Assembly (NCBI RefSeq): GCF_000143415.4
Contig: NW_003314265.1
Location: 2,869,181-2,933,180, forward strand
Length of the DNA stretch: 64,000 bases
DNA from: Selaginella moellendorffii
Lineage: Eukaryota; Plantae; Lycopodiophyta
Direction of reading: 5' to 3'
Position numbers and translations under genes: made by a program. The notes under the pieces are model-generated. The model saw only the letters and a list, made by a program, of their open reading frames with translations, was not told the origin of the DNA and did not search any database. Positions 6,746 through 33,840 of the stretch are shown here, piece by piece (within the stretch, counting starts at the first letter, position 1; each line of letters starts with the position of its first letter).

Positions 6746-6948
6746 TAGCAGGATCGTCCCGAAATATTGCTTCTTGAGACGCAAGCGTTAACTTTATTAT
6801 ATACACATACTAATCTCATCTCCAGCTATAAAACGAAGCTTCCAGAGAAAGGAAATTCTCTTCTTGAGGCCTTTGATGATCAATCTCCTGCTCCGGCGTG
6901 CGAGCGAAAAACACCCGTGCCTGTATAAAACACCTTTCGCCTATGTAT

Positions 6949-8899: not shown

Positions 8900-9074
8900 T
8901 GTGAGTGCTTGGAATATGGAAAGGGAATACAGAAAATGGGCATATCAATTAGCCCAAAAACCTAGGTTATATACAGGAGCAAGTGATCTGGATTGAAACC
9001 AATCCAACGGCTACCAAAATCCCATTACGTTAATATTAATATACGGCATCGTAGCTGTACACTTAGCCCTCACA
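8900..9074 (-). repeat. 3' LTR (175 bp, TG...CA); polypurine tract GAGAGGAAGGAATGA adjoins at 9075-9089
   Basis: Direct repeat of 13683-13857 with about 24 differences in ~170 nt by eye. Confidence 0.9.
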
Positions 9075-12000: not shown

Positions 12001-13682
12001 AACAAAAGTAATGGAAGTAGAGGTAGAAATAAAGGGACGAAAAGGTATGGAAGTGAAAGGAATGGATGAAACATAAGGAAGTATGAGACAAGGGGGAGAA
12101 GCCTCAAAATCCCATTTGGCATGATTGTGCTGCAGCCAATCCATACCAAGAATGAGGTCAAAAGTTTGATTCGCCACCACCCACAATGACTGTAACTCAA
12201 GCTTGAGATCGCCCACACACACAACCAAGTCCACCTCATCCCGTGCACATGCATTTTTACAGCCATTGCCATAAAGAATAAAAACTAATTCTGCTGCACG
12301 ACGCAAGTGTAGACGGCAACATGTGGCAACAGGTTGAGCAATAGAAGATAAACTCGAACCTATATCAACCAACACAGAGAGAATAATAGGAGACCTTTTG
12401 TTATAAAAACAAGCTTGGAAAGTAAACACTTGATGAATTGGTGCCGAGTGAACCCCTTGATGATACTCCCGAAAGAAGATGGAAGGGTTACTGACTTATT
12501 CACGCAAGGTCCCTCCGTTACTCACGTGACTCTTTGTTTCCCGGATGCATCTCGGTGTCCAGATCTTCCACTGCAGCAGCACCAATAAGATGTTGTTGAC
12601 GCTAAAGTCTCCACCTAGAAAATGGAGATCGCCAATCTGGAAAATGCCGACAACGTCGATAAGTATGACCAACTTCATCACACGCCCAATAGCGAACATC
12701 ACGGCCATGACCACATCCTCGCCCTTGTCCTTGGACTCGAACAGTAGCAGCATCAACCTCTATTGGAACAAGATCATCACCCATAGGAAGTGGAGCTAAA
12801 GGACGGGCAGCAAGAAGTGGAAGAGACAACGTCTCATAACATTGTGCCAAGCGAAAAGCATTGTCAAGGGTGGTGGGAGCAAGTGCATGCACAAGTTCGA
12901 CAAAATCTTGACGAAGTGCTAGCCACAACATTCCTAGCTTGATCCGCTCCGACATATTTGGCTCCGCACGAAGCAAAAGACTTCGGAAACGAACGCCAAA
13001 TTGCATCACTGACTCAAATGGCCCTTGGCGAAGACGATGCAATTGTTGGAAGGCATCATCACAATTGTCGACATGTCCGAATGTACGTTTGAAGATGTCT
13101 GGGAGAACACTCCAATCTTCATGAGTGGCTGTGCTCAAACCATTGTACCACTACAATGCCATTCCTTGGAGATACGTAGGAAACTCACACAAATGTCGAG
13201 CATCATCCCAAGAATGATATGTGGCAATCACCGTGAAGTGATCGAACCAATGATACACATCATCCCTAGGATTCTTACAAAAGAACTCTGGCCGAATGCG
13301 AGGATTGGCACCAAGAGTAGGAGGAGTTGTACCACGTGCCGTGAATGCCGCCATCAACTGAGTTTGGTTGTTTAATTGCAAGTGCATAGCATCAAACAAT
13401 TGTACCAACTGTTGCTCCAAAGTCAAAGGAGAAGATTGTAGATTTGCCATAAAGATGAACAAAAAGGAAAAAGCAAAAGAAGAGAAATGATAAAAAGCTA
13501 AAAGGAAATGGAGATCTAGACAATGCAAAAAACTAGATTTAAACCAAAATCCTAAAAGAAAATAATAAAAGAAAGGAAATGGAAAAAAGCTAGATCTAGA
13601 CGATGCAAAAGCTAGATCTAAACTAAAATCTTAAATCCAAACATTCCTCAAGTACAATCAAAAGTACCCTTACCTCGACCAA

Positions 13683-13857
13683 TGTGAGTGCTTGGAATAT
13701 ATAAAGGAAATATAAAAAATGTGCATATCAATTAGCCCAAAAACCCTAGTTTATATACATAAGTGAGTGGTCTGAATTGAAACCAATCCAACAGCTACCA
13801 AAATCCTACTACGCTAATATAAGTATACGGCATTGTAGCCATACACTTAGCCCTAAA
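13683..13857 (-). repeat. 5' LTR; degenerate PBS at 13665-13681
   Basis: Matches 8900-9074. Its outer end is eroded (ccctaaat vs ccctcaca). Confidence 0.9.
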
Positions 13858-15476
13858 TTTAAATTTAAAAATATTTTATTTTTAATCATTTTTATAATTT
13901 TTTTTAAATAGAATGAACTTTTTATTTTATGTGTTAAAAGAACTTTTATTATAAAGAAATGGAGTAATAAAGTTATGGACACTTACAATAACAATAATAA
14001 AGCCATAATTGTTTTCAACTTCATTAAAAAATATATGAATTTGTGAAATTTTAATTATTTTAAATATTATAATTTACAAAAATATTCTAATTAAGAAAAA
14101 CAATTAAAATGCAAAATAATAAAATAAAATAATTTATTTTAATTAAAATTTATTTATTTTATATAGAATCATAATTAAATAAATATTATTTTTTATGCAC
14201 AAACTGTGGTGGTGACGGTTGTTAGGTACAAACCAAATTTCGGGGGGGATCTTTACTAGCCCAATGTGATAATGCAAGTCCATGACCAAAGTTATATCTT
14301 TCCTCCCAGTATCGCGACTTTTGTTTTACTTTCTTTAATAATAAAATTTTAATTTATTATTTATTTTTACCAGTAAATAAAAATAATTATAAGCACAAAA
14401 TAAGATAAATAATAATTAAAATTATTCTATAATATAGTGTTTTTTTTATGTTAGGTGTAATTTTTGGAATCCTTTTGTAAAGGTTTAGTTTTTTTTTTTC
14501 TTAGTTGTTATTTATTTTATAAAAATATAAAGGTTTTACAGCTTTTTTATTTACAACTGAGTATTTTAAAATTTATCCACTTTGGAAATGTTAATAACTT
14601 CATTATTTTTATAACTTTCACATAAACCATAAAACTTATTCAACTAATTTATAAAGAATAAATTTTATCATTAAAATATTGTTTTTATACATTTATTTTT
14701 TACTTAGTGTAAAACTTTATCTTTCTCTGATGTAAATGTAAAATTTAAAATAACATAAATTAAGAATATGATAATTTTATTATTTTAAGTAAAATAAAGT
14801 TTCTGATATGCAGTTTTTTTAATTATAAATATAAGGTTTTTTCTTTTGTTATTTGTGGAAATTTTTTTTATTTACTATTGAGTTTTAAAAAAATATTTTT
14901 AAATCTATTTTTTGGCAAGATCAGGTTTACCCTATACTCCTTATAATATTTTATAGATTTCTATAATATACAAGTAGTGATGGAGTGTGGAACATATAAT
15001 GTTTTTATTTTGAAGTTAATTTTTTAATTTTGCTACTTTTATATATTTATTTGTATAATTTTAATTTAATGGTGTCACTTAAAATAAAAACATGGTATGA
15101 GTATGAGCCATATTCATACTATGTTTTCATTACAATTATTTAAAAATTTTATGTTTTAAATTTGTTTTTGTTTTTATTATTTTAAATATTTTTCATTTAC
15201 TATTTAATTTTTAAAATAAATTTCTTTAAAGACTGATAGTATTTTGTACATACCAACAGTGACAGAACTTTGAAACATTTAAAATCTGCATAAGTACCAT
15301 TACCTATCGTTTACCACAGTTTAGATATTTTTTAAATTAGTCATTAAAATGTGTTAAGCCTAGTGCAAGTGTGAGTTATTTTGCCACATTCCTATTCCGG
15401 TGGATCTGCATTTCTTGCTGGATCTCTTAAATTTAAACCCTAATCATGAAATTAGTTCAGTCGACAATGCTGGTCA

Positions 15477-17384
15477 ATGAGGCTGGTGGCATCACGCAGC
15501 AATTCGGCTGCAGCTACCAAGGAGACGCTCGCTTCACTGATCCGCTGCTGCGGCGAAGCAAAGGACCTCGCCCAGGCCAAAGACGTCCACTCCCGGCTCC
15601 TGGCCTGCCCAGCCCACAGATCGAATAAGTTCCTTGCCGATCAGCTCGTGATCATGTATGGAAAATGTGGCAGCGTCGAGAACGCGAGGAAGGTCTTCGA
15701 TTCCATTTCTCAGTGCGATGCCATCTCGTGGAACATCTTGATCGCGGCATATGCCCAAAACGGGCATCTGTACGAGGCAAAGACGCTTTTTAAAGAAACT
15801 CCGCAAAAGGATGTGGTTTCCTGGAACACAGTGATCACTGCTTTCCTTCAAGAAGGTAAAACAAGCATAGCAAATGGATACTTTGATAGAATGCCGCAGA
15901 GGAACGCTGTGTCTGGAAATTTGATGGTCCAAGCGTTTGCCCAGCTCGGGCAAATCGATCGCGCGAAAGAGGTGTTTGATTCAATGCCGGAGGCGAACTC
16001 TTGGTCGTGGGTCGGGCTCATTCTTTGCTACGGCGCTGCCGGCCAAACCGAGCGAGCGCTGGAGGCTTTCATAGCGAGCGTGGATCGCAGCATCGCGACC
16101 TGGACAGCGCTGCTCCAATCGTATGCCCGGATTGGGCATTTGGAGAGATCAAAGGGGGTGTTTGGGCGGATGCCGAAGCACAACCGTGTTGCCGCAAACT
16201 CGATGCTCCAGGGATTGATTCGCAGCGGCCGGATCGTGCAGGCCAAGGCCATTTTCGACGAGATGCCCGAGCGAGACGTGGCATCGTGGACGAGCATTGC
16301 CTTCGCATTCGCCCAAGCCGGAGACCTGGATCAATCCGCGCGTCTCTTCCATCGCTCGCCACAGCTCGACGTTGTGTCGTGCAACTCGATCATCTCGGCC
16401 TTTGGCGCCAGCGGCGAGCTCGAATTCGCGAGATGGGTCTTTGACTCCATGCCCAACGCTGCCAGGAACACGATCTCCTGGACGGCGATGCTCCACGCCC
16501 ACGCCCAGCGCTGCGATCGCGAGGGGGTGAAGAGATGCTTCGACGCAATGCCCACGCACGATCTCGTCTCGTGGGCCGCACTCCTGGGCTGCTACATCCA
16601 TCTGGGCGAGCTCGATCGAGCCAGGGACGCGCTCGCGAGGATGCCCAATTGGAGCGGCCTGGCGTGGAACTCGGTCCTCTCGGCAGCCGCGGAGAACAAC
16701 CTGGTCGCCATGGCGGAACCGCTCTTTCGGGAGATCCCGGACAAGGAGGATCCACTCGCGTGCGCCATGATGATCGGCCTCTACGCCCAGAACGGGCGGA
16801 TCGACCGCGCCTGGGAGGCGTTCATCGGCGTTCCCGAGCGGTCAAGGACGGTCGTGGCGTGGACCGGAATGGTGGGCGGATATGCCCAGACCGGGCATCC
16901 CGAGCGCGCGCTGGAGCTTTTCCGCGAGATGGAGCTCTCGGGCGTCATCCCCGACCGCGTCGCGATGATCACGGTGATGGACGCCTGCAGCCACGCCGGG
17001 GAGCTCGATCGAGGGGTCTGCTACTTCGTGTCGACGCAAGCGGACTATGGGATCGAGAGTTCGTGCGATCACTGGTGCTGCGCGGTGGATCTCCTGGGGC
17101 GCGCCGGGGAGATCGAGCGAGCGGAGGAATTGGTGGACGCGATGCCATTCGTGCCCGGCGGCGCGGTGTGGGGTTCGCTGCTCAATGGGTGCCGGATCCA
17201 GAGGGATCTGGGGCGGGCGATTCGAGCGGCGGAGCAGCTTGTGCTCGATCTGGAGCCAGGGAACTCGGGACCAATTCTGGCGCTTGCGAGCATCTACTGT
17301 GGATTGGATTGGAATGTAGGCGCTCAAACGAAAGAGAGAGAGCTTTCCAAGCAAGAAAAACACAAACGCACGCAAAACAACTGA
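15477..17384 (+). CDS. PLS-class pentatricopeptide repeat protein with C-terminal E-like region and no DYW domain; single exon
   Basis: 635-aa ORF with tandem ~31-aa FDxMPxxxxxSW motifs, then ACSHAG, HWCCAVDLLGRAG, MPFVPGGAVWGSLLNGC. Confidence 0.92.
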   Translation: MRLVASRSNSAAATKETLASLIRCCGEAKDLAQAKDVHSRLLACPAHRSNKFLADQLVIMYGKCGSVENARKVFDSISQCDAISWNILIAAYAQNGHLYEAKTLFKETPQKDVVSWNTVITAFLQEGKTSIANGYFDRMPQRNAVSGNLMVQAFAQLGQIDRAKEVFDSMPEANSWSWVGLILCYGAAGQTERALEAFIASVDRSIATWTALLQSYARIGHLERSKGVFGRMPKHNRVAANSMLQGLIRSGRIVQAKAIFDEMPERDVASWTSIAFAFAQAGDLDQSARLFHRSPQLDVVSCNSIISAFGASGELEFARWVFDSMPNAARNTISWTAMLHAHAQRCDREGVKRCFDAMPTHDLVSWAALLGCYIHLGELDRARDALARMPNWSGLAWNSVLSAAAENNLVAMAEPLFREIPDKEDPLACAMMIGLYAQNGRIDRAWEAFIGVPERSRTVVAWTGMVGGYAQTGHPERALELFREMELSGVIPDRVAMITVMDACSHAGELDRGVCYFVSTQADYGIESSCDHWCCAVDLLGRAGEIERAEELVDAMPFVPGGAVWGSLLNGCRIQRDLGRAIRAAEQLVLDLEPGNSGPILALASIYCGLDWNVGAQTKERELSKQEKHKRTQNN

Positions 17385-17830
17385 GCAATGAAAATTCATC
17401 CTTTCATCCTTATGTGCCAAGAAGAGAGATGCAAAACGTGTATTTTATTAGCACAAGAGTGGTTTAGAGGTGTCATTATGAACGAAATTGCTAAGCTTGA
17501 CCACTTTGTATTTATTCCTTCATTCATTAGCCCCTTACAGGGGTGCATGAGACCCACAAATTGTAGTCAGCCGTTTTGATCTCGTGAGCTTCGTTTGCTG
17601 ACAAATACAGACAAGTTATTTAGCTATGCCATAACAACTATGGTTCAAGCTTTTTCATTTCGCAAATGACACATTTTTGCAAATAATTAGTGAAAGTTTT
17701 TGCAACTTAACATCTTTTCATCCCAATGATATAGTGCTGTTGAAAGATTCTCATGTGGTTGTTCTTCAAGAGTTTTCTTTTATGGATCTAAAATTCTTGT
17801 GCGGGAACTCAAGAGTTTACCCACCTGAGA
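17373..17830 (+). pseudogene. RBOH 3'-part remnant (inverted relative to 23294-26924)
   Basis: Colinear patches encode [20 protein letters not shown] and GSKILVREL; intron sequence also matches (aatgaaaattcatcc vs aatgaaagatcatcc). Confidence 0.85.
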
Positions 17831-19073
17831 ATGTAGTGGCGTGATTGCAATCTCCTTGAACTATAATTTACAAGCTAGAAAAATCAGTAGCAAAAAAGAA
17901 AAAGGAAGGGAATTGTGGTAGCTTCAGCAGCAAAATCGTCTTAAGATTGAAGAGAAAACACCAAAAAGTAGACAACCGAGGAGAAAAGATAGCAAGACAA
18001 AAAATTTATGTAAATTGAAGTATGACAAAGAACACCACAGTGAGCTCAGTCTTGAGGTTGAGAACCTTGGCCTGGAAAGCCACAGTTTGAGCTCTGAGAT
18101 CGTGAACCTCATTTCTGAGAGCCTCAACCTTCTTATCAAACTGAGCTCACGCTCATGAGTTTTGAGGCCTTCAACCTTTGGTTTTGCTACTGCCCTTACA
18201 GCAATGAGCGCGCATTACTTTTGCTTAATGTTCTGTGCAGCCACCTGCTTGCCTTCTACAGCCACCTGTGCCTCGAGCGCATCAAGTTTCGCAAGCACAC
18301 TTTGGTTGAGCAGTTCTTTCACATGTTGTAAAACCTCCTGTTCCTTGCATTCTTCCTGAACACATCCTCTTTTGCTTGCTCTTGCATGAGACAATAGCTC
18401 CTCTTCTGTTTTTCCATGAATAGCTTGGCTACTTCTTTCTTCTCTCAGGGCTTTTCTTTGAGCAAATGGTTTTGATCAAGTGCTCAATTTTGCATGACAT
18501 TTCTAGGAGGCTGTGGCAATGCCTTGTCGAAAGCAAGAGCATATCTTTGCACAATAGCTTCGTTATGCCAGTTTTATCACAAAAGCGCAAACAAAACTAG
18601 AATTACAAAATCACAAGTGGTAATATCTAGAACTCGAGGAAAGTCTTCAATTTTTGGCCACATATCATCTGTCTGAAGCTAATTCAAAATGCTCCATAGA
18701 TATGTATAGCATATTAAATTCATATTAGTATATGAACTGATCATATAACTTTGATTGTGATGTCAATTTCAGTAAAACAAAATAGTAAATAATTTTAGAA
18801 AGCTAAACTTTATGGTTTTTTAAATTTAATGCTATCCATTTAATCAAGAAAATATATCCAGAATAAAGAAAGTAATGTCATTAGAAAAAATAACAAGCCA
18901 AAATGTCTAAAAGAAACTTGTAATTTATATTTATTATTATAAATAAATGAAAACATGTTTTCATTACAATTTAGTTTAAAACTATATTAATTTACACATT
19001 ATTAAATAAAAAATTGGTTTAAACATAATAAATATTTATTATAAATGAAAAGCTATGTTATAAGTGGCATCAA

Positions 19074-19304
19074 NNNNNNNNNNNNNNNNNNNNNNNNNNN
19101 NNNNNNNNNNNNNNNNNNNNNNNNNNNNNNNNNNNNNNNNNNNNNNNNNNNNNNNNNNNNNNNNNNNNNNNNNNNNNNNNNNNNNNNNNNNNNNNNNNNN
19201 NNNNNNNNNNNNNNNNNNNNNNNNNNNNNNNNNNNNNNNNNNNNNNNNNNNNNNNNNNNNNNNNNNNNNNNNNNNNNNNNNNNNNNNNNNNNNNNNNNNN
19301 NNNN
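19074..19304. other. Assembly gap (231 N)
   Basis: Run of n. Confidence 1.
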
Positions 19305-20102
19305 AAGAGTTTAATATCCTCTTAACATTGAGTATTTTAAATATAATGAAAAATATTTTGAAATTAAATAATTGAGTTTTATGATAAAGAAAAGTGCACT
19401 TAATAATATATATTATAATCGTATAAAATATAAAATAGTTGGAAACATATTTTTATGTTGGTTAAAGTAATTAAATTTTATCAATGTTTTTACAAAATAT
19501 AAAAAATATTAAACTTTCTATATGTAATATTTAATTTTATATAATTATTTAAAATTGTTCTTCCAAATGCTCCACCAAAACACTGTTGCTTAATTTTGAT
19601 TTCCCTGTTCTGGAGCTAATGCCAGTAAATTATGCGCCACAAAAGCTTGGTCATGTTTCTATCACTAACAAAGTGATGGACCTCTTTGGCAATGGCAATG
19701 CTCTCTGTAATTGGATCTGCACAAAAGCATAGTGTGTTTAATTGATGAAATCTCTGGAATCTTGATACACAATTACTTGGATTTTTCTGAACTTCCACGA
19801 GAACTGTGATGAATCTTCCTAGTAAACACACTTCACTTGCGTTTCATACCTTATCACTGTTCCAAAATCAACAGACGTATCTTAAATCCGTGTCATTTCA
19901 GTCCGTGCCAGGCTGCTATAGTTTGATCGAGCAGTCCGCCAATTCCTGGCCTGCGTGCACCTAACACTTAGTCTCGAGTCAATCGCCAGCAACGTCGTGA
20001 TATTACTATATACAAAACGTGTATATCAGGAAATACATATAATATGTAGTTTCCTGATATACAATCACCTCGTTTGGTATCGCTGTGTTGACCTTGATCG
20101 CT

Positions 20103-21762
20103 ATGTTGAAGTTTCACTTGTTCTTCATCGCTGTGATCTATTGCACGCTTCGGATCATCAAGGCCAACGATGATGGTGCTGTTTCATTTATCAGGGAAGC
20201 AAACAGCACAACTCTAGAGCACAAGTACGACTATATTGTTGTTGGAGGAGGAACTGCTGGCTGTGCGATCGCTGCAACCCTATCTCAGCGCTGCAAAGTT
20301 CTTGTTCTCGAGCGAGGCGGCTCCCCGTATGGAAATCCGCTGCTCTTGCGGATCGAGAACTCTGGGAACACCTTCGCCAACCCGGGTGGATTGGAGGCTC
20401 CCAATCAGGCATTCACTTCCGAGGATGGCGTCGCAAGCATCAGGCCAAATGTTTTGGGAGGAGGCAGCAGCATCAATGGAGCCGTCTACAATCGTGCTCC
20501 AGACGAGTTTATCAGCGATGCCAAGCTCGACAAGAACTTGGTCGAGAGCTCGTACGCTTGGGTGGAGAAAGTGGTGGCATCCAGGCCAAGAAACTTCAGT
20601 GCTTTCCAGAATTCCATCCGTGGAGCACTGCTCGAAGTCGGTGTAACGCCAGATTTTGGTTTCACTTACAAGTACGTTGTTGGAACAAAAACGACTGGAA
20701 ACACATTTGATAGCCACGGACAGCGTCATCCATCTTCAGATCTTCTTCTCGCTTATGCAAATCACAAGAACATCGATGTGCTGCTCCATGCGACAGTCTA
20801 CAAAGTCTTGTTACAAGGTAAAGTTCTCGTGATGCAATTGCGATCGATCTTGTATCCTTTTCTTCTACAGGAGGACGCAGTCGTGGAGTTCTATACACTG
20901 ACAATCTCGGCCGCTCTCACACAGCTCTTCTCAGCTCTGAAAGAAGTGAAGTTATAATCTCTGCGGGTGCTCTGGGAAGTCCACAGCTACTTATGCTAAG
21001 CGGTGTTGGTCCTAAAACTCACCTCGAGGAGATGGGAATTCCAGTAATCTTGGATTTGCCTAAGGTAGGGAAGGGCATGGGTGATAATCCGACAAACACC
21101 ATCATACTGCGCTCTCGCATTCCTGTTGGAAGCCTGATCCAGCAAGTGGTGGGAGTGAGCAAGTTAAACTTTAGCGCTGGAGGATACATTTTGAGTCAAG
21201 ACTCGGGGGCTATTGCCGGGGAGGTAAACGGCCCTCTATCAACAGGCGAGCTCTTCCTCAAGAGCATAAACGCGAGTGAAACTCCCCGAGTGAGATTCAA
21301 CTATTTCCAGAACCCGGTGGATCTACAACGCTGCATTGCCGGAGTCAACACTTTGGAGGAGATGGTGCTCTCTCGATCCATGGCAGCGCTGGTGTTTGGG
21401 AATCAGTCCCTTCCATCTGGAGGCACGGTGTCTTCGCCGGATCGAAGAAATGCAACGCTCGTTGCGAGTGGATCTGTGAATAGAACCATCAGCGAGTTTT
21501 GCCGGCAAAGTGTTTCGACGAATTACCACTACCATGGGGGATGCCCGCTTGGGGAAGTGGTCGACTGGAGCTTCCGGGTGATGGGCTTGAACGGATTGCG
21601 GGTCGTGGATGGATCTACTTTTTTGTCAACTCCTGGAACCAATCCTCAAGCAACAGTGATGATGCTTGGGAGGTACTCTATTCTGTTCTTTAGTGGATCA
21701 TTGTCTAACTCTCATGGAGCTTTTGCAGATACGTTGGAGTTGAAATTCTGAAAACACGATAG
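20103..21762 (+). CDS. GMC oxidoreductase, HOTHEAD/mandelonitrile-lyase-like; exons 20103-20817, 20871-21672, 21729-21762
   Basis: Signal peptide, [16 protein letters not shown] motif, [48 protein letters not shown]; two GT-AG introns restore the frame. Confidence 0.92.
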
Positions 21763-23140
21763 AATGGCAATTGCTACATTGCTGTGGGGCTAGCATTAAA
21801 TATTTCAAGGAATAAATTATAACATTATGCTAAACATTTGAGCATTAGTGCAAGCATTTATATCTTTTCTTTCCAAGTAATAATAAAATAATAACTTTTT
21901 TTTTATTACTAAAAATTTATTAAGTTAATCAAACTTATAAGCATTAGGATGATATTCATTATATTTTTTGTTTATAAAGCTTATAGTTTTAATTTTGTTT
22001 TGTTAAATAAAGAAAAAATAAAAATTTCTATGGAAAGGTGAAGTTAAAAACAACTTCTAAAGTATAAAAAAGTGTAATTTTATAACAATTATAGAAAAAT
22101 GACAAAAAGAGTTAAAACGTTTTAAAAATAAAATAAAATTTATAGAAAAATACTTTTTTATAGTTTTATCCAAAAGTATCTTAAAGCCATTTTTCCTTAT
22201 ATAATACTCTTTAATTGTATTAATAACAAAAATAAGAAATATATTTTTTATATATTCAATCAATACCACTAATCTTAGTTTTTTCATTAAATAGTAAAGA
22301 AATTACTATGTTATTTCTAAAAATAAATCTTAATTTGTTAACTATGATATTTTCAAATTTATAAAATTCATGTATAAGCGTAAATCCAGTGGTTATTATC
22401 ATTGGTTATTGTCCTGAAGAAAAATGACAAATTATGAATTTGTGTCAATTACAAAAAGTTAAAAAATATTTGATGTAATGCACACCCAAAACCATGAATA
22501 ATATAAACTTATGCATATAATATTCAAAACAATATAAATAAAATTTTTATAAAAATAATTATCTACTAATTTCGAAATTATTTCCCAAATATGTAATATA
22601 TTTATTGTTGCATATTCCAAATAAAATACACATTATGATTTCTTACTAGTAATTATAAAATATAATAATTTTTATTTTTATAAATATAAATTTATTATAT
22701 TAATAAACCTTATAAGCATTAGAATGTGTTATTATAGTTTTTTTTAGACTTTAAATTTTGATATTTTAATTTTTTTTATTAAATAAAAATAACAAAAATA
22801 TTTTATTTCATGTTACTCATTTTGTATTTCTAAGCTAGTGGATGCTACACTTATATAATAGAAGGAAATGAGTTTTAATATTTCAAACTTGTAAACCTCA
22901 TAGTGAGAGAGAATCCAACAATGTATTACACAAGTTTTTGTTCAAAATTCACAACAAAAGTTTAGAAAAATTTTAAAATACAAGTAAGTTTCGTTAATAA
23001 GAATACCACTTTTTTTAGTTTCTTCAAAAATATCTCAAGGACATTTTTTCCATTTTTTATTATCAATGACTAAAAGATGAAGAATGTCATTTTATATATT
23101 CCACCTAATCTTACCTTTTTCCTCTTTTTCTTTTGCAATT

Positions 23141-23270
23141 TACAGTTTAAGGATCTTGCAATCACACCTTTCACCTCCACTACATTTTAGTGTGGGTAAA
23201 TTGCGACTGTAATGTCCTATATGTCGCAGGGGTGGATGTTTAGAGCATGAGAGACAAATGTGGTGTGCCT
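23141..23270 (+). pseudogene. Decayed copy of APC11 last exon and 3' UTR
   Basis: tacagttt..cttgcaatcac..cacctcca..gtgggt..tgtcctat.tgtcgcaggg..tagagcatgagagac matches the reverse complement of 33115-33240. Confidence 0.88.
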
Positions 23271-23293
23271 TTAGTTGCCTGTGAGTATGTGTA

Positions 23294-26200
23294 TCAAAAG
23301 TTCTCCTTATGGAAGTCGAACTTGGTGGCTTGGTTGTGTGAGTATTCTCGTGCTAGGCTATCAAGTTCCCGTGCGAGAATTTTAGATCCACAAAAGAAAA
23401 CTCCTGAAGAACAAACTTAATGAGCAACCTTCAAGAGGACTATCTTTGCGTGTTACCTATCCGAGCGTTTGGATGAAGTGATGCTAAGTTGCCAAAAACT
23501 TTTCTCCAGTTCGGTTTTGCAAAATGTGTCCTGACCTGTTGATCATCGATTAGTTCCAAAATGAGATAAATAAAACTTTTGGTTTTACTCGAGTTCCAGA
23601 GAGGATGTCTACTCCGTTTTTCTCAAGGTGCAAAGCTTGCACCATTGTTATGAGAGCTGATCTCGCATCGTCCTCGGCATAGACACTAGTTAAATAGTTG
23701 TGCATTTCAATCAATGCCTGTGCTTGCATTTGTCAACGTCTAGAATATGAGGGACGTTTACAACATACCGAATGGTCAAGCTCAGCAATTTCGTTCATGA
23801 CGCCTCTGAACCACTCAAATGAGCCTTGCTCTTTTGTAAGCCAGTAAAAATACGCGTTGCATGGGCCGTTAATCTTTCTGAATGACGATTCCTTTTTCAG
23901 AGGTTTCATCTCACTTCTTCGCACCTAGACAATGGTAAGGAAATGGATGATCTTTCATTAAATCTCATACCTTGGGCTCAGTTGTTTTGATGTTATTCAG
24001 TATGTCCTTCAAAATACTGATGAAAGGTGTTGCTCCTATTCCAAGACCGATGAGAAGAAGCACGTCATATTTCTTGTAGTCCTGAGCCGGAGCTCCGTAA
24101 GGACCATCAATCAGCAGTTTAGGAAACCTGTTCCAACGAAAGTAAGGACTAACATCAAGTTTTAACACAAACCGTGACTGAAGTCCAAAGAGATACTCCG
24201 CTTTCAAAGGCCCGCTCTTGTTGCCAACTGGAGGTTCGCAAACCTGTGTAGTTCCAAGTCAATTACCACCAGAAAACTGTCCGATTTAAAGTACCTTGGA
24301 GAAAATTTTTCCCATTTCCCCAGTCCAATCTCCCGATATCCGAATATGAACACTGACAAAATCATCGCTCGGTGCGGAGGTGATGGAGAAAGGATGCCTG
24401 CAGACAACCAGAGACGCCAATCAGTCAACGCTAATAAAGTTAGAACGTTTTTTAATGTAGAACGTGGGAGCACAAACGATACCATTCGAAAGGTGATATC
24501 GATGGGCACTTGATGAATATATACATACCACTTTGGTACTTAAATCCTGGAGGCTTGGTCATGTCCAAAGACAAAACGTTTCCAGGATAGATTGCCGCCT
24601 GAGAAGACGAAAATTATGATCACTAAACTGCCAGAATTATACAACCTTTAGGATTTGAACAGTGGAGTATCCTGCTCGCAGACCGGAAAACGTTCGCTCG
24701 AACATGTACAGCAGTGTTGGAAGAAGAAGATACATCCATGCCTGAAAGAACGAAAGAATTAAGAACTGCAAAATGCCAAAGAAAAACAAAGTAAAGGAAG
24801 GGAAACATTACTTACTGTTTTGTCGACCCAGTCGTGCTTTAAGAACAGGAACATGGAATGTAAGACGAGCATCGTGTAGACAATGATGAACAGATGGTGG
24901 GAGTACCAAAAGGCGTTGAAGCCAGTCAATCTGTGTAACGGCCACGGGAGCTTCACCAGGTTTCTCCGCGAGCGTCCTGATGCTAGAACGAAGGCGACGC
25001 ACATAATGAGGACCATGGCAATGCCTGTAACGCCTTCGATCGATTTTACGAGCTCCCAGTACGTAGGTTGCCTGTTTCCAAAGTCCCCAGCGAGTCCAGC
25101 GGCCATGAACTGCTCGCGAGGGGAATTCGCCAGCCTCGGAAAGTCACAGGTGAGATGAACTCCGCCGTGAAGAACGACTCCAAGGAAGATTGCTCCCCCG
25201 ATTATCTGTAACCACGATGTTGAGAACACGGGAAAAAGATTACCAACTTGCCTTGTGGAAGTTGATGTTGTCATCAAAAGGAATAAGAGATCCCACGGCG
25301 CTTGTGGACCTCAGCCAAGTGATGGAATTCCTACAAACCGGGAGAAGGATGAGAGCCATGTTGAGCTTGAGCGTCTCAGCGGCGCCTTTGGCGACGCATA
25401 TGCAGTACCCGGCAACCAGAAACGACGACTGGTTCTTGTACTGCACGAACTTCCAGGAAAACAGGCACACCACGGCCAAAAGCCACAAGCCCAGCACCCA
25501 CAGTCGCTGCCAGTGCTCGATGAATACGTAGCAAATGCCGCGTACCAAGCCGCTGCCACAAAACATCCTCGGCTGCACCAAAATCTGGCCGTAGTTTCCG
25601 ATTCCGGTCGTCCCTTGGATCAGACTCTCGAGCTGCCAAAGCTGCACGTCAAGCAGGAAAGACAATCCCATGAGAAAACGTACACCACTTTTTTGGAAAA
25701 GAGGAACAAAGTGATGGAAAGAGTGCAAGCTCAGCTGGAAATTTGTTTGTCATGCATGACTATTCTGGCTCCAAAGGCGACTGAATGAATGAATCAGTCC
25801 AAAACTGTGAGAGCTGTGATGCAATGCATGGGATGGGCAAAAAATTCGTTAAAAATAAAAAGAAAGCCATGGACGACGAAAGAGAAGTCCAATGCTAGCT
25901 GCTAGCAGGAGAAGGAATGGAGTACCTCAATGTAGCCTCTTCGCTGGGGGTCCAGCTCTTCCATGATCATCGCAGCGTACTCCTCGGCACGCTCCTTGAG
26001 CTTGGACAGCTTGTTCTCGGACGCGCTCAGCATGATGACCTACAAAATCGCAAACAAAGGACGAGGACGTCACCGCCACCGCTCACCAATTGATCGATCT
26101 TTGTTACCTCCTTCACCTCCGCCTCGGAGATGAGTCCATCCAGATCCTTGTCACACCTAGATCGCAAGGATATCCAGGAGATGATCGAAGAGAAGAAGAA

Positions 26201-26924
26201 ATGGCTTACATGTCGAAGAAGATTTGCATCCTCGAGTCGAAATTCTGGTCCGAAATCTGGAGCCAAAAATCCCTGAGCTCGTCGTAGCTGATCCATTCCA
26301 CGCGCTGCCGATGCTTGAGCTTGCGCCGCGCCAAGGCATCGAAGAGCTCCCCGGCAAACTCTTTAGAGTCTTGCATGCCTAGCAAGAAAGAAAAAAAAAG
26401 AGCGCGATGGATGATCAATCAAACGCAACCAAAATACTTCTCCCACCGATGCAAAGCCCAAAATCCGCCCGCGAGAGGAGCCCCTGGTCGCTGGCCAGCT
26501 TCCAGAATCTCGACTCCACCGCCCGCCATTGCGAATTCGTGGTGCTGATGAATCGCAGGCCCTGGAGCGCGTGCTTGGTCCCGGAGTTGAGGAGCCGCTG
26601 CTTGTTCTTGCTCCACAAATCCTTCCTCAGCACGAACGGGCTGCTGGCAATGGCGTCGCGCAGGCTGATCGGGCTGCGATCGGGCGTGGATTTCGCCGAC
26701 GCCTGCCCCGCGGAGAGCCAGGAGAGCTGCCGGATGAGCGCCAGGCCGCGCGGCGAGCTCCTCGGCGCGCGGCTCTGGGAAGGGTCGTCGACGAGCGTTA
26801 CCGACCTGTGCTCGGGATCGATGTCGATGGTGAGCTCCAGCAAATGCCGCTTGGATCCCTCGCGCTGATCATCTGCCCCCTTGCGATCGCCGAAGCTCTC
26901 GAGCTCTTCTTCCATGCCCGACAT
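23294..26924 (-). CDS. RBOH: Respiratory burst oxidase homolog (NADPH oxidase), multi-exon
   Basis: [12 protein letters not shown]-hand region ([15 protein letters not shown]), [63 protein letters not shown]-terminal [10 protein letters not shown]. Confidence 0.95.
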
Positions 26925-27279
26925 ATACAAAAGAACAGCTACGTCCCCTGGTCGCTAGACTCGATCTATCTATCGATCGGGCTATCGATCGAGCTACAGA
27001 GAGATGGACCCAGCCGGCAAGACATGACATTCGCGCCACAGCAACAGCGTAGCTTCTCAAGCCCCCTTTTGATGGATGACACGATTCCTTCCTTCTAGAA
27101 TTCCAGATTTTCTCTCCTCTTTCTCACGCTCGCCTGATCAAACACGCGGCGACAAACTGCGACAGGCGACCTAGAGATCGGTGGTCCAGTCTCATCAAAT
27201 TCCAATCGGGTACTACTACATTGCGTCAAGATCTAGCGCTAGGGCTCACGCGACAGAGGAGTGTTTGAGTCCCTCTCTA

Positions 27280-27860
27280 TTGTTTTTTCTTCTCTCTCCC
27301 ACTTTCATTCGTTTGACCTCCCCAGTTCTTAGACTCCAATCCAATCCACAGTCAAGTAGCAAACCCCTAGACCGAGCTCCCGGCGTGGCTGCACGCGCCC
27401 ATCACAATGCTCGCCACGTCTCGCTCGGCCATCTCATCGAAGGTTGCCTTGGCCTGCACAATCCAGCCGCTGCGAATCAGTCAGTCCCTGGCGAATTTGC
27501 CCAAACACCGCCCTTTGATCTCTCCAAATGCCGAAGCCGGGCATACGTATAGAGCAGCGCTGTCCAGGTCACGATGCTCCGATCCCCGCTCGCCGTAAAA
27601 GCTTCCAGTGCTCGCTTTGTCTGGCCACCAGCGCCATAGCAAACGATGAGCCCGGCCCACGACCAAGAGTTCGCCTCCAGCATTGAATCAACCACCTCTT
27701 TCTTGCAATCGATTTGCCCGTCATGGGCAAATTCTTGGACCATAAACACAGCGTTCCTTTACGATATTCTCTCAAAATAACCATATACAGGAAGCCACAT
27801 CCTTACTTCAAACAATATCTTTGCTTCCCGTTTTGCCGGATGTTCCACGAGATGGTATCA
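27280..27860 (-). pseudogene. Internally deleted inverted copy of PPR 15477-17384
   Basis: EANSWSWAGLIVCYGAGGQTKRALEAF..TWTALL..HLERSKG is near-identical to the intact PPR; the 3' tag ctgtggattggattgga is also retained. Confidence 0.92.
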
Positions 27861-29049
27861 TGTAAAAGAATATATTTTGAATATCCAGCCTAAGTTATTC
27901 CTTAATTTAATGGCTGTGATTTTCTCCTTTTATAATTCAAACCACATTCTGAATATATTTTAAGGCACATGAATTGGTTAATTAAGAGTTCATCCTCACC
28001 ATCAAGCTGATAGACACATGCTCTAGATGTGTGAGCAACTTTAAAATCTTAGCTTTCTCCTTCCAACTAGTGTGATGGGAAAATCAATAATTATACTTAG
28101 ACTTTGACCTTTACTTTATAGTTCTTTGCTTGACACTCAATCTTTGGAGAGCACTTTCTACACACTAGGCAAAGAATTAGTAACTTCTACCATGAAGGCA
28201 CTTCCATCCATAAGCATTACATAAACCTTTATTTTGGTATCTAATAGACATGGTTATTTTAAAATTCCATCATCATAATGTATGTGTCATGCAAGATCAT
28301 CATGATCTATGAGACAACATTATAGTTTTATAGTTGTCATATGTGCTTTAACACCTTTTATACAAGCCAATATAGCCCAACTGGATTTTACTAAATTAAT
28401 TGAAGAATATTTCAAATAGCTTTTGGATGGTTATAAAAAAAGGAAAATCAACTAATTTTCAGTAAAATTTTTTTAAAATTTTATAACTAGTTTTATTTTG
28501 AAAATAAATGTAAATATCACAAAACTAGTTTACAAATGTTTTTATATAAACTGTTATGAGGTAGTTTTAAGGGTAATTCAACTATTTTTGTTTTATCACT
28601 TGCGTACTTTGTAATCATCCTTATATATTTAAAAGAGAAAAGGCTTTATATTCCAATTTAAATTCCTTTTCTTCTAGATGGTTTAGATGAGGCTATGTGT
28701 AAAAATTAAATATGTTAGTTTGAATCAATTTTAAGTTTTTTTGGAGAGAAAAATTAGAGTAGCAATTTTATTTGCTAGGATATTGGATGCTAAATTTTAT
28801 TATGATTATAATTCCTTAAGTGTTTACATACATTTTTGTGAAAGATAGTAATACTAAAGCATTTTAAATGCAAATGTTATAAAATTTTGTGTCTTCTTTT
28901 TTATAAAATTACTTCATACCCTACAGTAAATCAGTAAAAATAAGCATTGCAATGTGTTTTTAAAGGTAAGAAAGTTTTTCCTAATTTTCTCAAATACTAA
29001 TGTTACATCATTTTTCGTATTATGATTATATGTTAAAGATAATAATAAG

Positions 29050-32000
29050 TAAAGGTAAACTCAACTCCATTAGTAGTATCAGATCATAATCATATAGGAA
29101 TTTATATGGTGAAGCACTAATAAAACTTTGCACCCCTATAATATATGCATACTGAAAAAATGGTAAATAACCATCTTAATTTGAATGTTGAAAGTTCACG
29201 TACTTCACAATCATTTCTTTGAAAGTGGAGTGAGACATTCCACCAAACCATCTAACATAGATAATAAGTACTTGTGAAAATGTGATATATCCCCAATTGA
29301 GACATTAAAATATGAAATGCTTTAACTATAAATGCGAGACCATTATCTAAAAGAATTCACTCCGAATAGAAATGTTAGAACACCACTTGATTAAGGAGGA
29401 AATATCCAATACCAATTGCAAACACACTAGCAAAAGCATTGAATTCCACCCAAAAAGTCAAGTAGTCAAAAACAATAATGACATACTCATGGCACCAATT
29501 GCAACTACGTATATATTAGATAATGTCACATCACATCTTTGACCAATAGAAAAATCTATGCAGTTTATTAGTCACATGATAATGTTCCATATGCCTACCT
29601 AGAATAGGAGAATTATGGTAAGTATAGAGAAAGTGTAGAATAAAAATCGAAAGCACCACCAATCGTAAATGATCATCATGATCTATCTCTACAAAATAAA
29701 GAAGATTATCCTCAAGGTAATATTAAGAATGTAAATGCCAAAATAACAAGTCATTAGCAAGTGATGTAAGATTTTTAAACCCATTGGGAAATATTCAAAT
29801 CCACAGCTCAACCTTTTGAGCCTCACGAACCTCGTCAAGAGAAAATAAATTTTGCTCCTTGTAGATATTGAATATCAAAGATAACAACTGTCAATAGCAC
29901 AAAATTGTCATCCAAAAAATCCATAGATACTAGAACAACATGTTCATTAGAAATATAAAAAGAAAGTGAAAAAGGAAAAGGAGCTCGAGAAAGAGTGTTA
30001 GCATTAACTGTAGAACTCCCCGAATGATAACTAACATTAAAATTATATATCTGAAGCTTCAAAGCCCATCGAATAGTACAATTAACAAAGTTCTTCCACT
30101 TCAATAATGAAGTAACCATAATATAATCACCTTCTAGTAATATTTGAAAACCATATAGATATACATGAAGTTTTTCGAAACCCCAAACTACTCCTTTTTT
30201 ATCGTGGATTTATCTCCATTGGTTGTAATGTACGGCTAATGTATGGGATGACACTAATCAGGCACACTCGGTTTCGTTTGCATTAGCACATTTGTAAAAC
30301 TGATATTAGAAGTATTCACGTGTAAAATGAAAAGTCGAATGTAGTTAGGATATGCTAAAACTAGAGGAGTCATGAATAACTTTTTTAGATCTGTAAAAAT
30401 CTACTCATAATTCTCGGACCAAATGAAAAACAACCTTAATAACTTTAACAATGCTCGCAATAGTGCAGTACAATCAAAAAAATGATTAACAAAATAGTTG
30501 AGATATTGCATCTTGCCTAAGAAGCATTGTATATTATTCACACATTTTGGAGTAAAGAACTTGAGAACAACCATAAGTTTATCAGGATCAATTTGCAAAT
30601 TTTCACGAAAAATACGGTATCCAAGATAAGTGGTGTCTTTAGACCTAAACACACTTTAATTACTTTAGCTTTAAACTAACTTTCTGTAATCGATCCAACA
30701 CTTTATGAATATCACAAACATTTTCCTCCCATTTCCCCTCCAACTGGATCAAAACATTCGATGAAATCAATAATCACCTTTGGCATATCACAAAGAAATT
30801 TATCTATTATTTGCATTAGAGCATTGCTTAAATCAAACGGTATCACCAAAACTCCTATAGGAACCTTGATTGAACAAACATCTATAATTTGAATAGGATG
30901 ATCTGTTGCAATCTTGGCCCTAAATAACATGTTAAATTCAAAGAGATTAACATACTCTTTTATGAGTTAGTTAACCACTACAATACAAAGACCGTTGGAG
31001 AGATTTAAAGAGGGAATAAAGGAACAAAATAGAAACATAGAAAGAAATAAAAGGGAGACAAAATGATGGAACTAAAGGTAAAAGCAAAGGGATAAAGAAG
31101 AACAAAAGTGAGAGGAATGGAAAAAAGATAATAAAGTATGAGACAAAGGGGAAAAGCCTTAAAGTTATATTTGGCATGATTGCATTATAATAAATTCATA
31201 TCAAAAATGAGGTCAAAAACTTGATTTAACACCACTTGCAATGAGTGTAACTCAAACTTCAGATTGCCCACATACACAACTAAATGTACCTGATCCCATG
31301 TAGATGCGTGTGTATGGCTATTATTATAAAGAATGAAAATTGGCTTTATAGCATGATGCAAATGTAGATGGCAATATGTGGCAATAAGCTAAGCAATAGA
31401 AAATAAACTCAAGTATGTATCAATTAACATGAAGAGAATAATATGAGATCTTTTGTTATAAAAACAAATTTGGAAAGTAAACACTAGATAAATTGGTGTC
31501 GAGTGAACTTTGTGATGATACTCCTGAAAGAAAGATGGAGGGGTCACTAACTTATTTGCACAAAGACCCTCCACTACTCACAGGACTCTTTATTTCTCAA
31601 AAAAATCTCAATGTCCAAATCTTCAACTGTAGTAGCATCAATAAGACATTGTTGACGCTAAAGTCGCCACCCAAGAAATGGTCACTTATCTAGAAAATGT
31701 TAATAACGCTAATAAATGTGACTAACTTCATCATATGTCTAACAGCAAACATCATGGCCATGACCACATCCTTGTTTTTGTCTTTGAACTTGGGCAGCAA
31801 CAGCATCAACTTCCATGAAAGCAAGACCATCTTTTATAGAAAGTGAAATTAAAGGTGTGGCAAACACTTCTTCATGATCTTATAGGATTTATGTATACAC
31901 TTTCTTTAGCCACTTTGTTGATGCTCTTCCCTTTGGCATAATGTTATAAAACGTTACCTCTTCCACTTTTCATTACATGTACATTCTTAATTTGATTTGC

Positions 32001-32710
32001 TTTGACATATTTGCCTTTGCACGAAACAAAGGGTTTCAGAAGCGAATGCCAAATTGCATCACTAACTTAAATGGCCCATAATGAAAATGATGCAATTGTT
32101 AGAAAATCACAACCATTGGTATGTTCAAATATGCATTTGAAGACATATAAGAGAATGCTTAAACCATTGTACAATTGCAGTGCCATCCCTTAAAAACACA
32201 TGGGAAACTCAAGTAAATGCCAAGTATCATCCCAAAAATGATATGTGGCAATCATTGTAAAGTGATTGAACTAATGATATATATCATCTCCATGATTTCT
32301 ATGGAAGAACTCTAACTGGACATGAAGATTGGCAGCAAAAGTAGAAGGAATTATACCACGTGTCATGAATATTGCCATTAATTGAGTTTAATTGTTCAAT
32401 TGAGCAATTGCATTAATTGTTACTTTAGAATCAAAGGAGGAAAAGTCTACTACTCTACTATGAAGATGAATAAAAAGGAAAAAAAGGAAACAAAAAGAAA
32501 TTAAAAAATCTATAAGGAAAGGGAAATTTAGACAATGTAAAAGCTAAATTTAAATTAAAATCCCAAATCTAAGCACTCTTCAAAAACAATTAAAACTACC
32601 CCTCATCTCCACCAATGCGAGTGTATGAAATATGGAAATAGAATGCAGAAATATACATATCAATTAGCCCAAAAACCATAGTTTATATAAGAGTGAGTGC
32701 CAATGGCTAA
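29050..32710 (-). mobile_element. Second, more decayed and 3'-truncated copy of the same gypsy family; partial 5' LTR from 32616, PBS 32597-32614
   Basis: Colinear with ~9560-13790; internal deletions, no 3' LTR, many C>T/G>A differences. Confidence 0.92.
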
Positions 32711-32999
32711 TAAATTTTTAATCTATTGATTGTAGAATAAAATTATATTTATTAATCTCATTAAAAAGTTCAATTTCACTGTGTATCACGATAATAAAAA
32801 ACATTCTAAAAATAAATAGTTGCAGGTTAAAGAAATTATAAAAAATTATGACTATTGTAAAAAACCTAAACTTCCATTATCCATGACGCCATTGGCATAC
32901 AACCTCAGCCCTCTCTAGATTTCCAGATTTCTCCATTCTTTAGCGCTCACTTACAAGAGAGACTAGTGTTTTGAATCCCAACCCTGAAGGTTTCTCATT

Positions 33000-33085
33000 C
33001 GGTTCATTCTTGGCGCGGGAGTGACTCGGGAATACTCTCCACCAAGTTCAACTCCCACAAGGAGAACTTTTGGCACACATACACG
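33000..33085 (+). pseudogene. RBOH last-exon remnant, tail-to-tail with intact APC11
   Basis: attcttggcgcgggag..gaatactc..ccaccaagttcaactcccacaaggagaacttttggcacacatac matches the RBOH end ccaccaagttcgacttccataaggagaacttttgatacacatac. Confidence 0.85.
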
Positions 33086-33119
33086 CAAACAACACACAGA
33101 CGTCATGTTTATTCGTCTC

Positions 33120-33840
33120 TCATGCTCTATACTTCCACTCCCTGCGACACATAGGACACTGTGGTCGGGGGCTCTGCGAGTTCACCCACTTGAGAATACA
33201 ATGGAGGTGGAACGCGTGATTGCAAGCTCCCCAAACTGTAGATCACAACCGAGAAAACACACAGGTAGTCAGTAGCAAACGATAACAATCAAAGACTACA
33301 AAGGAAACAGGAAAGCCAAACTAACAAACTTGACTCTGTCCAGTGAAGAGATCTCTCGCAGCTGCATGCTTAGAAGCTGCGGAAAAATCGATCGTTTTCA
33401 CTGCGAAGATCGCTCTAGCACTAGAAAACCTTCTCGGGTCTTCCCTCGACGAGAGAGCTCGCTCGAAGAGAGGGCCGAAGTGTGCGTATCTCAAGCCAGA
33501 CGAAACGAAAACAGAGAATACAGACACCAGAGGAAAAAAAAAACCACTTACTGAGAGGGCAATCGTCGCCGGGCATCTTGCAATCCGGGCAGCATCCATC
33601 AAACGCCATTCGGCAAATCCCACAGGCGTCGTCGTGCGCGTCCCATGTCCAAGAAGCCACAGCGTGCCATCTACAAAAACGAGTCTCGTAGAGAAGAAAG
33701 AAAAAAAAAAGAAAAGAGAAACTTACTCTAAGATTTACAATGCCGAGCCGATCGCGAGAGCCAGCAGTTAAGGAGATCACAACAAGGAAGAAAAAAAATG
33801 CAATAGATCGAGCAAGGATACTCAGCACCTTCACCTTCAT
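33120..33840 (-). CDS. APC11: Anaphase-promoting complex subunit 11 (RING-H2); exons 33840-33822, 33727 (1 nt), 33670-33552, 33235-33120
   Basis: Spliced product MKVKVLKWHAVASWTWDAHDDACGICRMAFDGCCPDCKMPGDDCPLIWGACNHAFHLHCILKWVNSQSPRPQCPMCRREWKYRA*. Confidence 0.95.

What the first reader, a model, noticed from the sequence alone, without database searches (positions are those of the whole stretch)
15477..33840. Inverted triplication of a PPR-RBOH-APC11 block with reciprocal gene retention
Seen: copy 1 (+) has the intact PPR and an RBOH remnant (17373-17830). Copy 2 (-) has an APC11 remnant (23141-23270), the intact RBOH and a PPR remnant (27280-27860). Copy 3 (+) has an RBOH remnant (33000-33085) and the intact APC11. 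Inference: an ancestral PPR>RBOH><APC11 unit was amplified +/-/+, and each copy kept exactly one different gene. Dosage returned to one while RBOH ended up inverted and displaced. This is a route to gene-order change with no net gene gain.
Basis: partly seen in the sequence, partly recalled or inferred. Interest (0 to 1): 0.8.

Follow-up and report, generated by a model that had tools for sequence, protein, structure and literature searches.

The report
Fossil inverted triplication around spikemoss RBOH
In the spikemoss Selaginella moellendorffii an old copy-and-flip rearrangement turned the RBOH gene around between its neighbours PPR and APC11 and left short dead pieces of each gene as scars; it is a clear example of a known kind of rearrangement, not a new mechanism.

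Summary
The window is S. moellendorffii scaffold GL377569.1. An intact PPR (15477-17384, +), RBOH (23294-26924, -) and APC11 (33123-33840, -) each sit beside decayed pieces of the other two. The piece holding the tail-to-tail 3' ends of RBOH and APC11 (stop codons about 45 bp apart) occurs three times, in +/-/+ order. About four fifths of PPR occurs twice, +/-.

The copies differ by 0.25-0.37 substitutions per site, with no pair resolved as closer. Alleles differ by 2-3%.

The other haplotype (GL377656.1) has the same layout. It bridges the N gap with about 565 bp of 17%-GC spacer, so I see no misassembly.

No trace shows that whole units were amplified. Copies 1 and 2 both stop just inside APC11 intron 2, and copy 2 lacks the first ~80 PPR codons. 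PPR and APC11 were therefore probably never fully duplicated; only RBOH could have been.

A 5.2-kb spacer with an expressed GMC oxidoreductase gene between copies 1 and 2 is unexplained. No close outgroup genome was reachable.

The class is known: inverted triplication, or inversion with duplicated breakpoints.

The parts
15477..17384 (+). Intact PPR gene, a single 635-codon ORF (copy 1).
   Evidence: Pfam PPR E 8e-76. The 635-aa RefSeq product of the other haplotype is P0122. RNA contigs cover it.
17420..17810 (+). Copy 1 remnant of the last RBOH exons with their introns. It starts mid-exon, 36-70 bp after the PPR stop codon.
   Evidence: blastn 84% and 82.5% to 23816-23765 and 23443-23364. 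tblastn. Alignments A1 and the six-sequence alignment. The PPR RNA contigs run on into it, to 17478 and 17598.
17813..17925 (+). Copy 1 remnant of the 5' part of APC11 exon 3 plus the start of intron 2. The APC11 sense strand here is minus.
   Evidence: Matches 33178-33257 and 23168-23125. Alignments.
17926..23099 (.). Spacer X, with no likeness to the unit. It holds the assembly gap (19074-19304) and an intact GMC oxidoreductase gene (20103-21762, +).
   Evidence: Pfam GMC_oxred_N and GMC_oxred_C. Annotated as 516 aa. Spliced RNA contigs at high depth, with introns 20816-20868 and 21671-21726. No TE domains in its ORFs. No likeness to the unit.
23100..23258 (-). Copy 2 remnant of APC11 exon 3. 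It now lies directly 3' of the RBOH stop codon.
   Evidence: 72% to 33256-33039. tblastn 75% over 20 aa. Coordinate map.
23294..26924 (-). Intact RBOH (NADPH oxidase) gene, 883 aa (copy 2, inverted).
   Evidence: Annotation with NADPH_Ox, Ferric_reduct, FAD_binding_8 and NAD_binding_6 in both haplotypes. Pfam on exon ORFs. Its mRNA contig cross-maps on the copy 1 remnant.
27264..27859 (-). Copy 2 remnant of PPR. It corresponds to PPR positions 15717-17376 with deletions of about 670 and 270 bp, an in-frame stop and a frameshift. It lies 340 bp upstream of the RBOH start codon.
   Evidence: blastn 77% and 80%. Extra colinear hits. Local alignment score 62 against a shuffle mean of 21.5. dS 0.25 and dN/dS 0.53.
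27860..33004 (.). Spacer Y, mostly a decayed Ty3-type LTR retrotransposon on the minus strand (29049-32700).
   Evidence: 70-75% to the element at 8900-13854. Reverse-transcriptase and integrase-like ORFs. That other element's own LTRs are 86.6% alike, so the two elements are independent insertions.
33005..33093 (+). Copy 3 remnant of the last RBOH exon. The stop codon has changed to TGG at 33071-33073 and there is a 10-bp deletion. It lies directly 3' of the APC11 stop codon.
   Evidence: 84% to 23328-23274. Alignments. Coordinate map.
33123..33840 (-). Intact APC11 gene (copy 3). Exons are near 33823-33840, 33547-33681 and 33123-33242.
   Evidence: Pfam zf-ANAPC11 E 1.6e-13 and 1.6e-15. P0124, 86 aa, is 100% identical over exon 2.

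Best explanation
One old duplicative rearrangement of the inverted-triplication kind (template switching during replication or repair) hit a very compact PPR>RBOH><APC11 block.

Shown:
- The segment with the overlapping 3' ends of RBOH and APC11 now exists three times, in +/-/+ order.
- The 3' four fifths of PPR exists twice, +/-.
- RBOH sits in the inverted middle copy.

Inferred:
- The amplified segment ran from about PPR codon 80 to just inside APC11 intron 2.
- PPR and APC11 were therefore never fully duplicated. At most RBOH was, and any extra RBOH bodies were later deleted.
- The surviving scraps are the old neighbours' sequence that each intact gene needs as its own flank. The PPR scrap is the 340-bp-distant upstream region of RBOH. 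The APC11 scrap is the 3' flank of RBOH. The RBOH scrap is the 3' flank of APC11. The copy 1 scrap now lies in the transcribed 3' region of PPR.
- An LTR retrotransposon entered between copies 2 and 3 later.
- The origin of the GMC-bearing spacer between copies 1 and 2 is unknown.
For: - Three colinear copies of the junction, middle one inverted.
- Similar ages: PPR pair dS 0.25. Junction copies JC 0.26-0.37 with SE 0.07-0.09, and unresolved site patterns 10/8/5. Alleles differ by only 2-3%.
- Copies 1 and 2 end at nearly the same point in APC11 intron 2.
- Nothing beyond the boundaries is alike.
- No scraps of the RBOH body, APC11 exons 1-2 or the PPR 5' end lie elsewhere.
- The remnants keep intron sequence, so the copying was at the DNA level.
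- The stop codons of RBOH and APC11 are 43-46 bp apart in copies 2 and 3.
- The PPR remnant ends 340 bp from the RBOH start codon.
- RNA contigs run from the PPR coding region into the copy 1 remnant.
- Both haplotype scaffolds share the whole layout.
- Inverted triplications made by template switching are a described class (PMC11293582, PMC4689423).
Against: - The copies are not contiguous. A 5.2-kb unique spacer with an expressed gene separates copies 1 and 2, which a simple fold-back junction does not predict.
- Junction microhomology or inverted repeats can no longer be read at 25-35% divergence.
- The three-way comparison rests on only 69 columns.
- The absent PPR 5' end, or absent RBOH bodies, could equally be later deletions.
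- No close outgroup shows the unrearranged state.
- The UTR and promoter roles of the scraps are inferred from position. Only the PPR 3' case has RNA contig support.
Confidence: 0.55

Rival explanations
1. The complete PPR-RBOH-APC11 unit was amplified to three whole copies (+/-/+). Each copy then lost two of its three genes by deletion, so dosage returned to one.
For: - Complementary retention is what is seen.
- Decay by internal deletion is real here. The PPR remnant has two deletions, and the copy 1 junction lacks about 190 bp.
- The ages are similar.
Against: - It needs at least four large, clean deletions that leave no scrap of the RBOH body, APC11 exons 1-2 or the PPR 5' end.
- Copies 1 and 2 stop at almost the same place in APC11 intron 2.
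- Spacer X stays unexplained.
Confidence: 0.2
2. A plain inversion of RBOH by staggered breaks, which copies the sequence at both breakpoints in inverted orientation (the Drosophila model). It gave PPR...PPR' and junction'...junction. The third junction copy next to PPR, together with spacer X, arrived as filler or templated DNA in the same or a nearby event. No gene body was ever duplicated.
For: - Apart from the segment 17420-23099, the layout is exactly what the staggered-break model predicts: an inverted middle flanked by inverted copies of both breakpoint regions (PMC1885836).
- It needs no later deletion of RBOH copies.
- A second inverted pair (the ABC transporter halves at 2986-6721 and 61709-56270, 82-84%) hints that such events recur here.
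Against: - The junction is present three times, not two.
- The third copy is as old as the others and no closer to either of them, so an extra step has to be added.
- The source of X is unknown.
Confidence: 0.2
3. An artefact (a misjoin at the N gap or collapsed haplotypes), or gene fragments carried in by a transposon.
For: - An N gap lies inside the structure.
- No public-run contig spans it.
- Transposons are present nearby.
Against: - The second haplotype scaffold is colinear from 5474 to 43829 and bridges the gap.
- The copies differ by 20-30% but alleles by 2-3%.
- Independent DNA and RNA contigs cover the PPR/remnant and remnant/spacer joints.
- The fragments keep the order and orientation of the unit.
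- No TE domains in spacer X.
Confidence: 0.04

Closest known systems
DUP-TRP/INV-DUP and origin-dependent inverted-repeat amplification (ODIRA) inverted triplications in human and yeast (PMC11293582, PMC4689423, PMC10766183).
   Same: A segment is present three times with the middle copy inverted. It is flanked by sequence present twice. The layout can be explained by two template switches. No gene is broken by the event itself.
   Different: This case is fixed, old (about 0.3 substitutions per site) and decayed back to single genes. The copies are separated by foreign DNA. Junction repeats cannot be read. The known cases are recent, dosage-increasing variants.
Inversions flanked by inverted duplications of breakpoint genes, from staggered breaks, in Drosophila (PMC1885836).
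   Same: An inverted gene is flanked by inverted, decaying copies of the genes that lay at the two breakpoints. There is no net gene gain.
   Different: One breakpoint sequence occurs three times here. The inverted segment is a single gene. This is a plant (lycophyte) genome.
Duplication followed by random or reciprocal loss as a route to a new gene order (the tandem-duplication-random-loss model of mitochondrial genomes; my own knowledge, not checked here).
   Same: Gene order changes through a duplicated intermediate, and pseudogene scraps are the evidence.
   Different: This is a nuclear locus, with an inverted rather than tandem copy. It is not shown that whole genes other than perhaps RBOH were ever duplicated.

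Membership tests
Inverted triplication (DUP-TRP/INV-DUP or ODIRA class) | The same segment is present three times in +/-/+ order. | tested here: met
   Junction copies at 17420-17925 (+), 23100-23830 (-) and 33005-33290 (+).
Inverted triplication (DUP-TRP/INV-DUP or ODIRA class) | The triplicated core is flanked by sequence present twice. | tested here: met
   PPR positions 15717-17376 are present in copies 1 and 2 only. The longer RBOH 3' part (17420-17730) is in copies 1 and 2 only.
Inverted triplication (DUP-TRP/INV-DUP or ODIRA class) | The copies are joined directly at fold-back or template-switch junctions with inverted repeats or microhomology. | tested here: inconclusive
   Copies 1 and 2 end within about 30 bp of each other. 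However, 5.2 kb of unrelated DNA lies between them, and 5.1 kb (mostly TE) lies between copies 2 and 3. Microhomology is unreadable at this divergence.
Inverted triplication (DUP-TRP/INV-DUP or ODIRA class) | All copies arose in one event, so they have equal age. | tested here: inconclusive
   JC 0.26-0.37 with SE 0.07-0.09, site patterns 10/8/5, and PPR dS 0.25. This is compatible with one event, but power is low (69 columns).
Staggered-break inversion with breakpoint duplications | The inverted segment is flanked by inverted copies of both breakpoint regions. | tested here: met
   PPR (+) and PPR' (-) bracket one side. Junction (-) and junction (+) bracket the other.
Staggered-break inversion with breakpoint duplications | Each breakpoint region is present exactly twice. 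| tested here: not met
   There is a third junction copy at 17420-17925.
   No RBOH body in copies 1 or 3, no APC11 exons 1-2 in copies 1 or 2, and no PPR 5' end in copy 2. Absence of scraps is not proof of absence at origin.
   Apart from the Selaginella moellendorffii copies themselves (92% and 78%), no protein exceeds about 37% identity to this PPR among 5.8 billion proteins. APC11 loci of Diphasiastrum and Riccia have no RBOH or PPR within 10 kb, but these species are far too distant to decide.
Transposon-captured gene fragments (Pack-MULE or Helitron type) | The fragments lie inside an element with terminal repeats or transposon genes. | tested here: not met
   No TE domains in spacer X. 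No terminal repeats around the scraps. The scraps keep the order of the unit.

The most novel reading that the evidence does not exclude
In this very compact genome RBOH and APC11 shared their 3' ends (stop codons about 45 bp apart), and RBOH's upstream region reached into PPR. Any cut between them would therefore have been lethal or damaging. Only a rearrangement that copies the shared flanks could reorder them. The fossils would then be retained, working parts (promoter, 3' UTRs), not junk. The event would also have released RBOH and the essential APC11 from convergent overlapping transcription.
Probability: 0.25. Interest if true: 0.5.

Novelty: new member of a known kind. Interest (0 to 1): 0.35.

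Why it matters
It is a clean, readable fossil of a complex duplicative rearrangement in an early-diverging land plant. It shows how a single gene can be flipped inside a gene-dense block without losing or gaining genes. It also shows that the leftover gene scraps mark the sequence each gene needed to keep as its own flank.

It is a caution for annotation, because remnants next to intact genes can be taken for exons or extra genes. It is a caution for synteny work, because order can change without net gain.

It does not reveal a new mechanism.

Tried and rejected
- Retrotransposons as part of the duplicated unit: rejected. The two copies (8900-13854 and 29049-32700) are 70-75% alike, while the LTRs of the first are 86.6% alike, so they entered independently.
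- Extra homology beyond the copy ends, both strands: none above shuffles.
- Scraps of spacer X, the RPA-interacting gene or spacer Y elsewhere in the window: none.
- Transposon domains in spacer X: none.
- Misjoin at the gap: the other haplotype is colinear and bridges it. Public-run contigs are too short to span it, so reads gave no verdict on the gap itself.
- Run X19, labelled as another organism: its contigs were 99% or more identical, i.e. low-depth DNA of the same species, not an outgroup.
- Outgroups. Look-ups by exact product failed for P0001 and P0150; a longer isoform (P0243) worked. The Diphasiastrum and Riccia APC11 loci, and three metagenome plant contigs, show no RBOH or PPR nearby. 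That is uninformative at that distance.
- Spliced gene models were never joined for any search. Exons and ORFs were searched one by one by reference, and the joined step was left out.
- The third large protein search and the representative search were not used, because no claim rested on them.
Full report
SOURCE. The window is Selaginella moellendorffii scaffold GL377569.1 (GCA_000143415.2). Locus L001 from that record is 100% identical to window 5654-19073 and 19305-27384. Window position 1 is record position 2869181. The second haplotype of the same assembly, GL377656.1, was fetched as L002 and L003.

GENES. Pfam on ORFs taken by reference, together with the public annotation, gives this order:
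- PPR, 15477-17384 (+), one 635-codon ORF.
- GMC oxidoreductase, 20103-21762 (+).
- RBOH, 23294-26924 (-), 883 aa.
- APC11, 33123-33840 (-), 86 aa.
A CPSF_A/RSE1-type gene, GDPD and other genes follow to the right.

- PPR remnant: 27859-27264 (-).
- RBOH 3' remnant: 17420-17810 (+).
- APC11 exon-3 remnant: 23100-23258.
- RBOH last-exon remnant: 33005-33093 (+).
E-values run from 2.5e-8 to 6e-92 within a 64-kb search space.

Multiple alignments show that all three copies are colinear across one and the same junction: the last RBOH exons, then 43-46 bp, then APC11 exon 3 on the opposite strand.

The remnants contain intron sequence, so they are DNA copies and not retrocopies.

The PPR remnant is specific. 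It is 65-87% identical in protein to the neighbouring PPR, whereas outside the species' own copies of this gene nothing exceeds about 37%.

THE GAP AND THE ASSEMBLY. The 231 N lie in non-coding AT-rich spacer between copy 1 and the GMC gene.
- The other haplotype is colinear with the window from 5474 to 43829, at 90-98% identity outside transposons. It carries all three copies and fills the gap with about 565 bp of 17%-GC sequence without N.
- Contigs of independent public runs cover the PPR/remnant joint (17357-17746) and the remnant/spacer joint (17717-17966, 17808-18188). None spans the gap.
- The copies differ from one another by 20-30%, while alleles differ by 2-3%. Haplotype collapse therefore cannot explain the structure.

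AGE.
- PPR against its remnant: dS 0.25, dN/dS 0.53, with an in-frame stop.
- In the 69 columns where all three junction copies align, the JC distances are 0.26, 0.30 and 0.37 (SE 0.07-0.09). The site patterns are 10, 8 and 5, so no pair is resolved as closer.
- This fits one event, or events close in time, roughly ten times older than the allelic split. Power is low.

WHAT WAS ACTUALLY COPIED.
- Copy 2 holds scraps of PPR from position 15717 to 17376, with deletions of about 670 and 270 bp. It holds nothing of the first ~80 codons or the upstream region.
- Copies 1 and 2 both stop about 15-60 bp into APC11 intron 2. Neither holds APC11 exon 1 or 2.
- Copy 3 starts in the last RBOH intron or exon.
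- No RBOH body exists outside copy 2.
The junction is thus triplicated and most of PPR is duplicated. Nothing shows that PPR or APC11 were ever present as two whole genes.

THE SPACERS.
- Y (27860-33004) is mostly a decayed Ty3-type LTR retrotransposon. It is 70-75% like another element at 8900-13854, whose own LTRs are 86.6% alike, so the two entered independently and later.
- X (17926-23099) is unique. It has no TE domains and no likeness to the unit.
- X carries the GMC gene, which is spliced (introns of 53 and 56 nt, GT..AG) and reaches very high contig depth in runs X2 and X1. The splicing shows that these runs are RNA.
- I cannot explain how X came to lie between copies 1 and 2.

A FUNCTIONAL READING OF THE FOSSILS (inferred). 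The old unit was extremely tight. The PPR 3' end lies 340 bp from the RBOH start codon, and the RBOH and APC11 stop codons are about 45 bp apart. Each intact gene still carries its old neighbour's sequence exactly where its own flank must be:
- the PPR scrap upstream of RBOH;
- the APC11 scrap 3' of RBOH;
- the RBOH scrap 3' of APC11.
For PPR there is direct support. RNA contigs that cover the PPR coding region run on into the copy 1 remnant (to 17478 and 17598), and lower-depth contigs continue to about 18140-18390. Run X2 has zero depth from 18200 to 20000.

MECHANISM. A +/-/+ arrangement with an inverted middle copy, flanked by twice-present sequence, is the signature of inverted triplications made by template switching (DUP-TRP/INV-DUP, ODIRA). 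Such an event breaks no gene here. A simple inverted duplication would have cut APC11.

My preferred reading is therefore a single event of this class, with amplicon ends at about PPR codon 80 and in APC11 intron 2. It was followed by deletion of the extra RBOH body or bodies, entry of the retrotransposon, and an unexplained gain of X.

Two rivals remain open:
- A staggered-break inversion (PMC1885836). This predicts everything except the third junction copy plus X.

OUTGROUPS.
- Apart from the Selaginella moellendorffii copies themselves (92% and 78%), no protein exceeds about 37% identity to this PPR in the protein collection.
- The APC11 loci of Diphasiastrum complanatum (L007) and Riccia fluitans (L008), and three metagenome plant contigs, have no RBOH or PPR within about 10 kb.
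- These lineages are far older than the event, so this neither supports nor refutes.

VERDICT. This is a well-preserved member of a known class of rearrangement, of moderate interest.

PROCEDURE. 

Noticed in passing
window 2986-6721 (+) and 61709-56270 (-): Two halves of ABCC-type ABC transporter genes are inverted copies, 81.5-83.8% identical including non-coding parts. That puts them in the same age class as the PPR/RBOH/APC11 copies. They bracket the whole ~50-kb gene block, so this may be a second duplicative inversion. The left copy has shorter, broken ORFs where the right copy has a 454-aa ORF.
   Followed up: partly
window 29049-32883, against L003 (reverse complement) 4176-9700: Inside the retrotransposon of spacer Y the two haplotypes are only 82-85% identical, with about 1.8 kb extra in GL377656.1. 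The flanks are 95-98% identical. Possible causes are gene conversion from other copies, a non-allelic element, or an assembly mix-up of TE reads. Unexplained.
   Followed up: no
window 6949-15767: One annotation stretches an RPA-interacting-protein gene (303 aa) over 8.8 kb, across an LTR retrotransposon (8900-13854) and into the PPR start. The other haplotype has a compact 232-aa gene, equivalent to about 6950-7930. The long model looks wrong.
   Followed up: no
window 15477-17384: GenBank models of this PPR (520, 547 and 497 aa, with introns) disagree with the plain 635-codon ORF that RefSeq uses for the other haplotype. That disagreement made the window's own gene look only 78% identical in the protein search.
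   Followed up: partly
window 20816-20868 and 21671-21726: The GMC oxidoreductase gene has two very short GT..AG introns (53 and 56 nt), confirmed by spliced RNA contigs. It shows far higher RNA contig depth than its neighbours.
   Followed up: partly
window 23248-23296 and 33071-33122: RBOH and APC11 stop codons were only 43-46 bp apart, tail to tail, in the ancestral unit. Their transcripts must have overlapped in antisense. Today each gene's 3' flank is a decaying copy of the other's last exon.
   Followed up: partly
window 44030-45802 (-): A second PPR gene (591-codon ORF), only about 30% identical to the first. It is an old family member and not part of the rearrangement.
   Followed up: no
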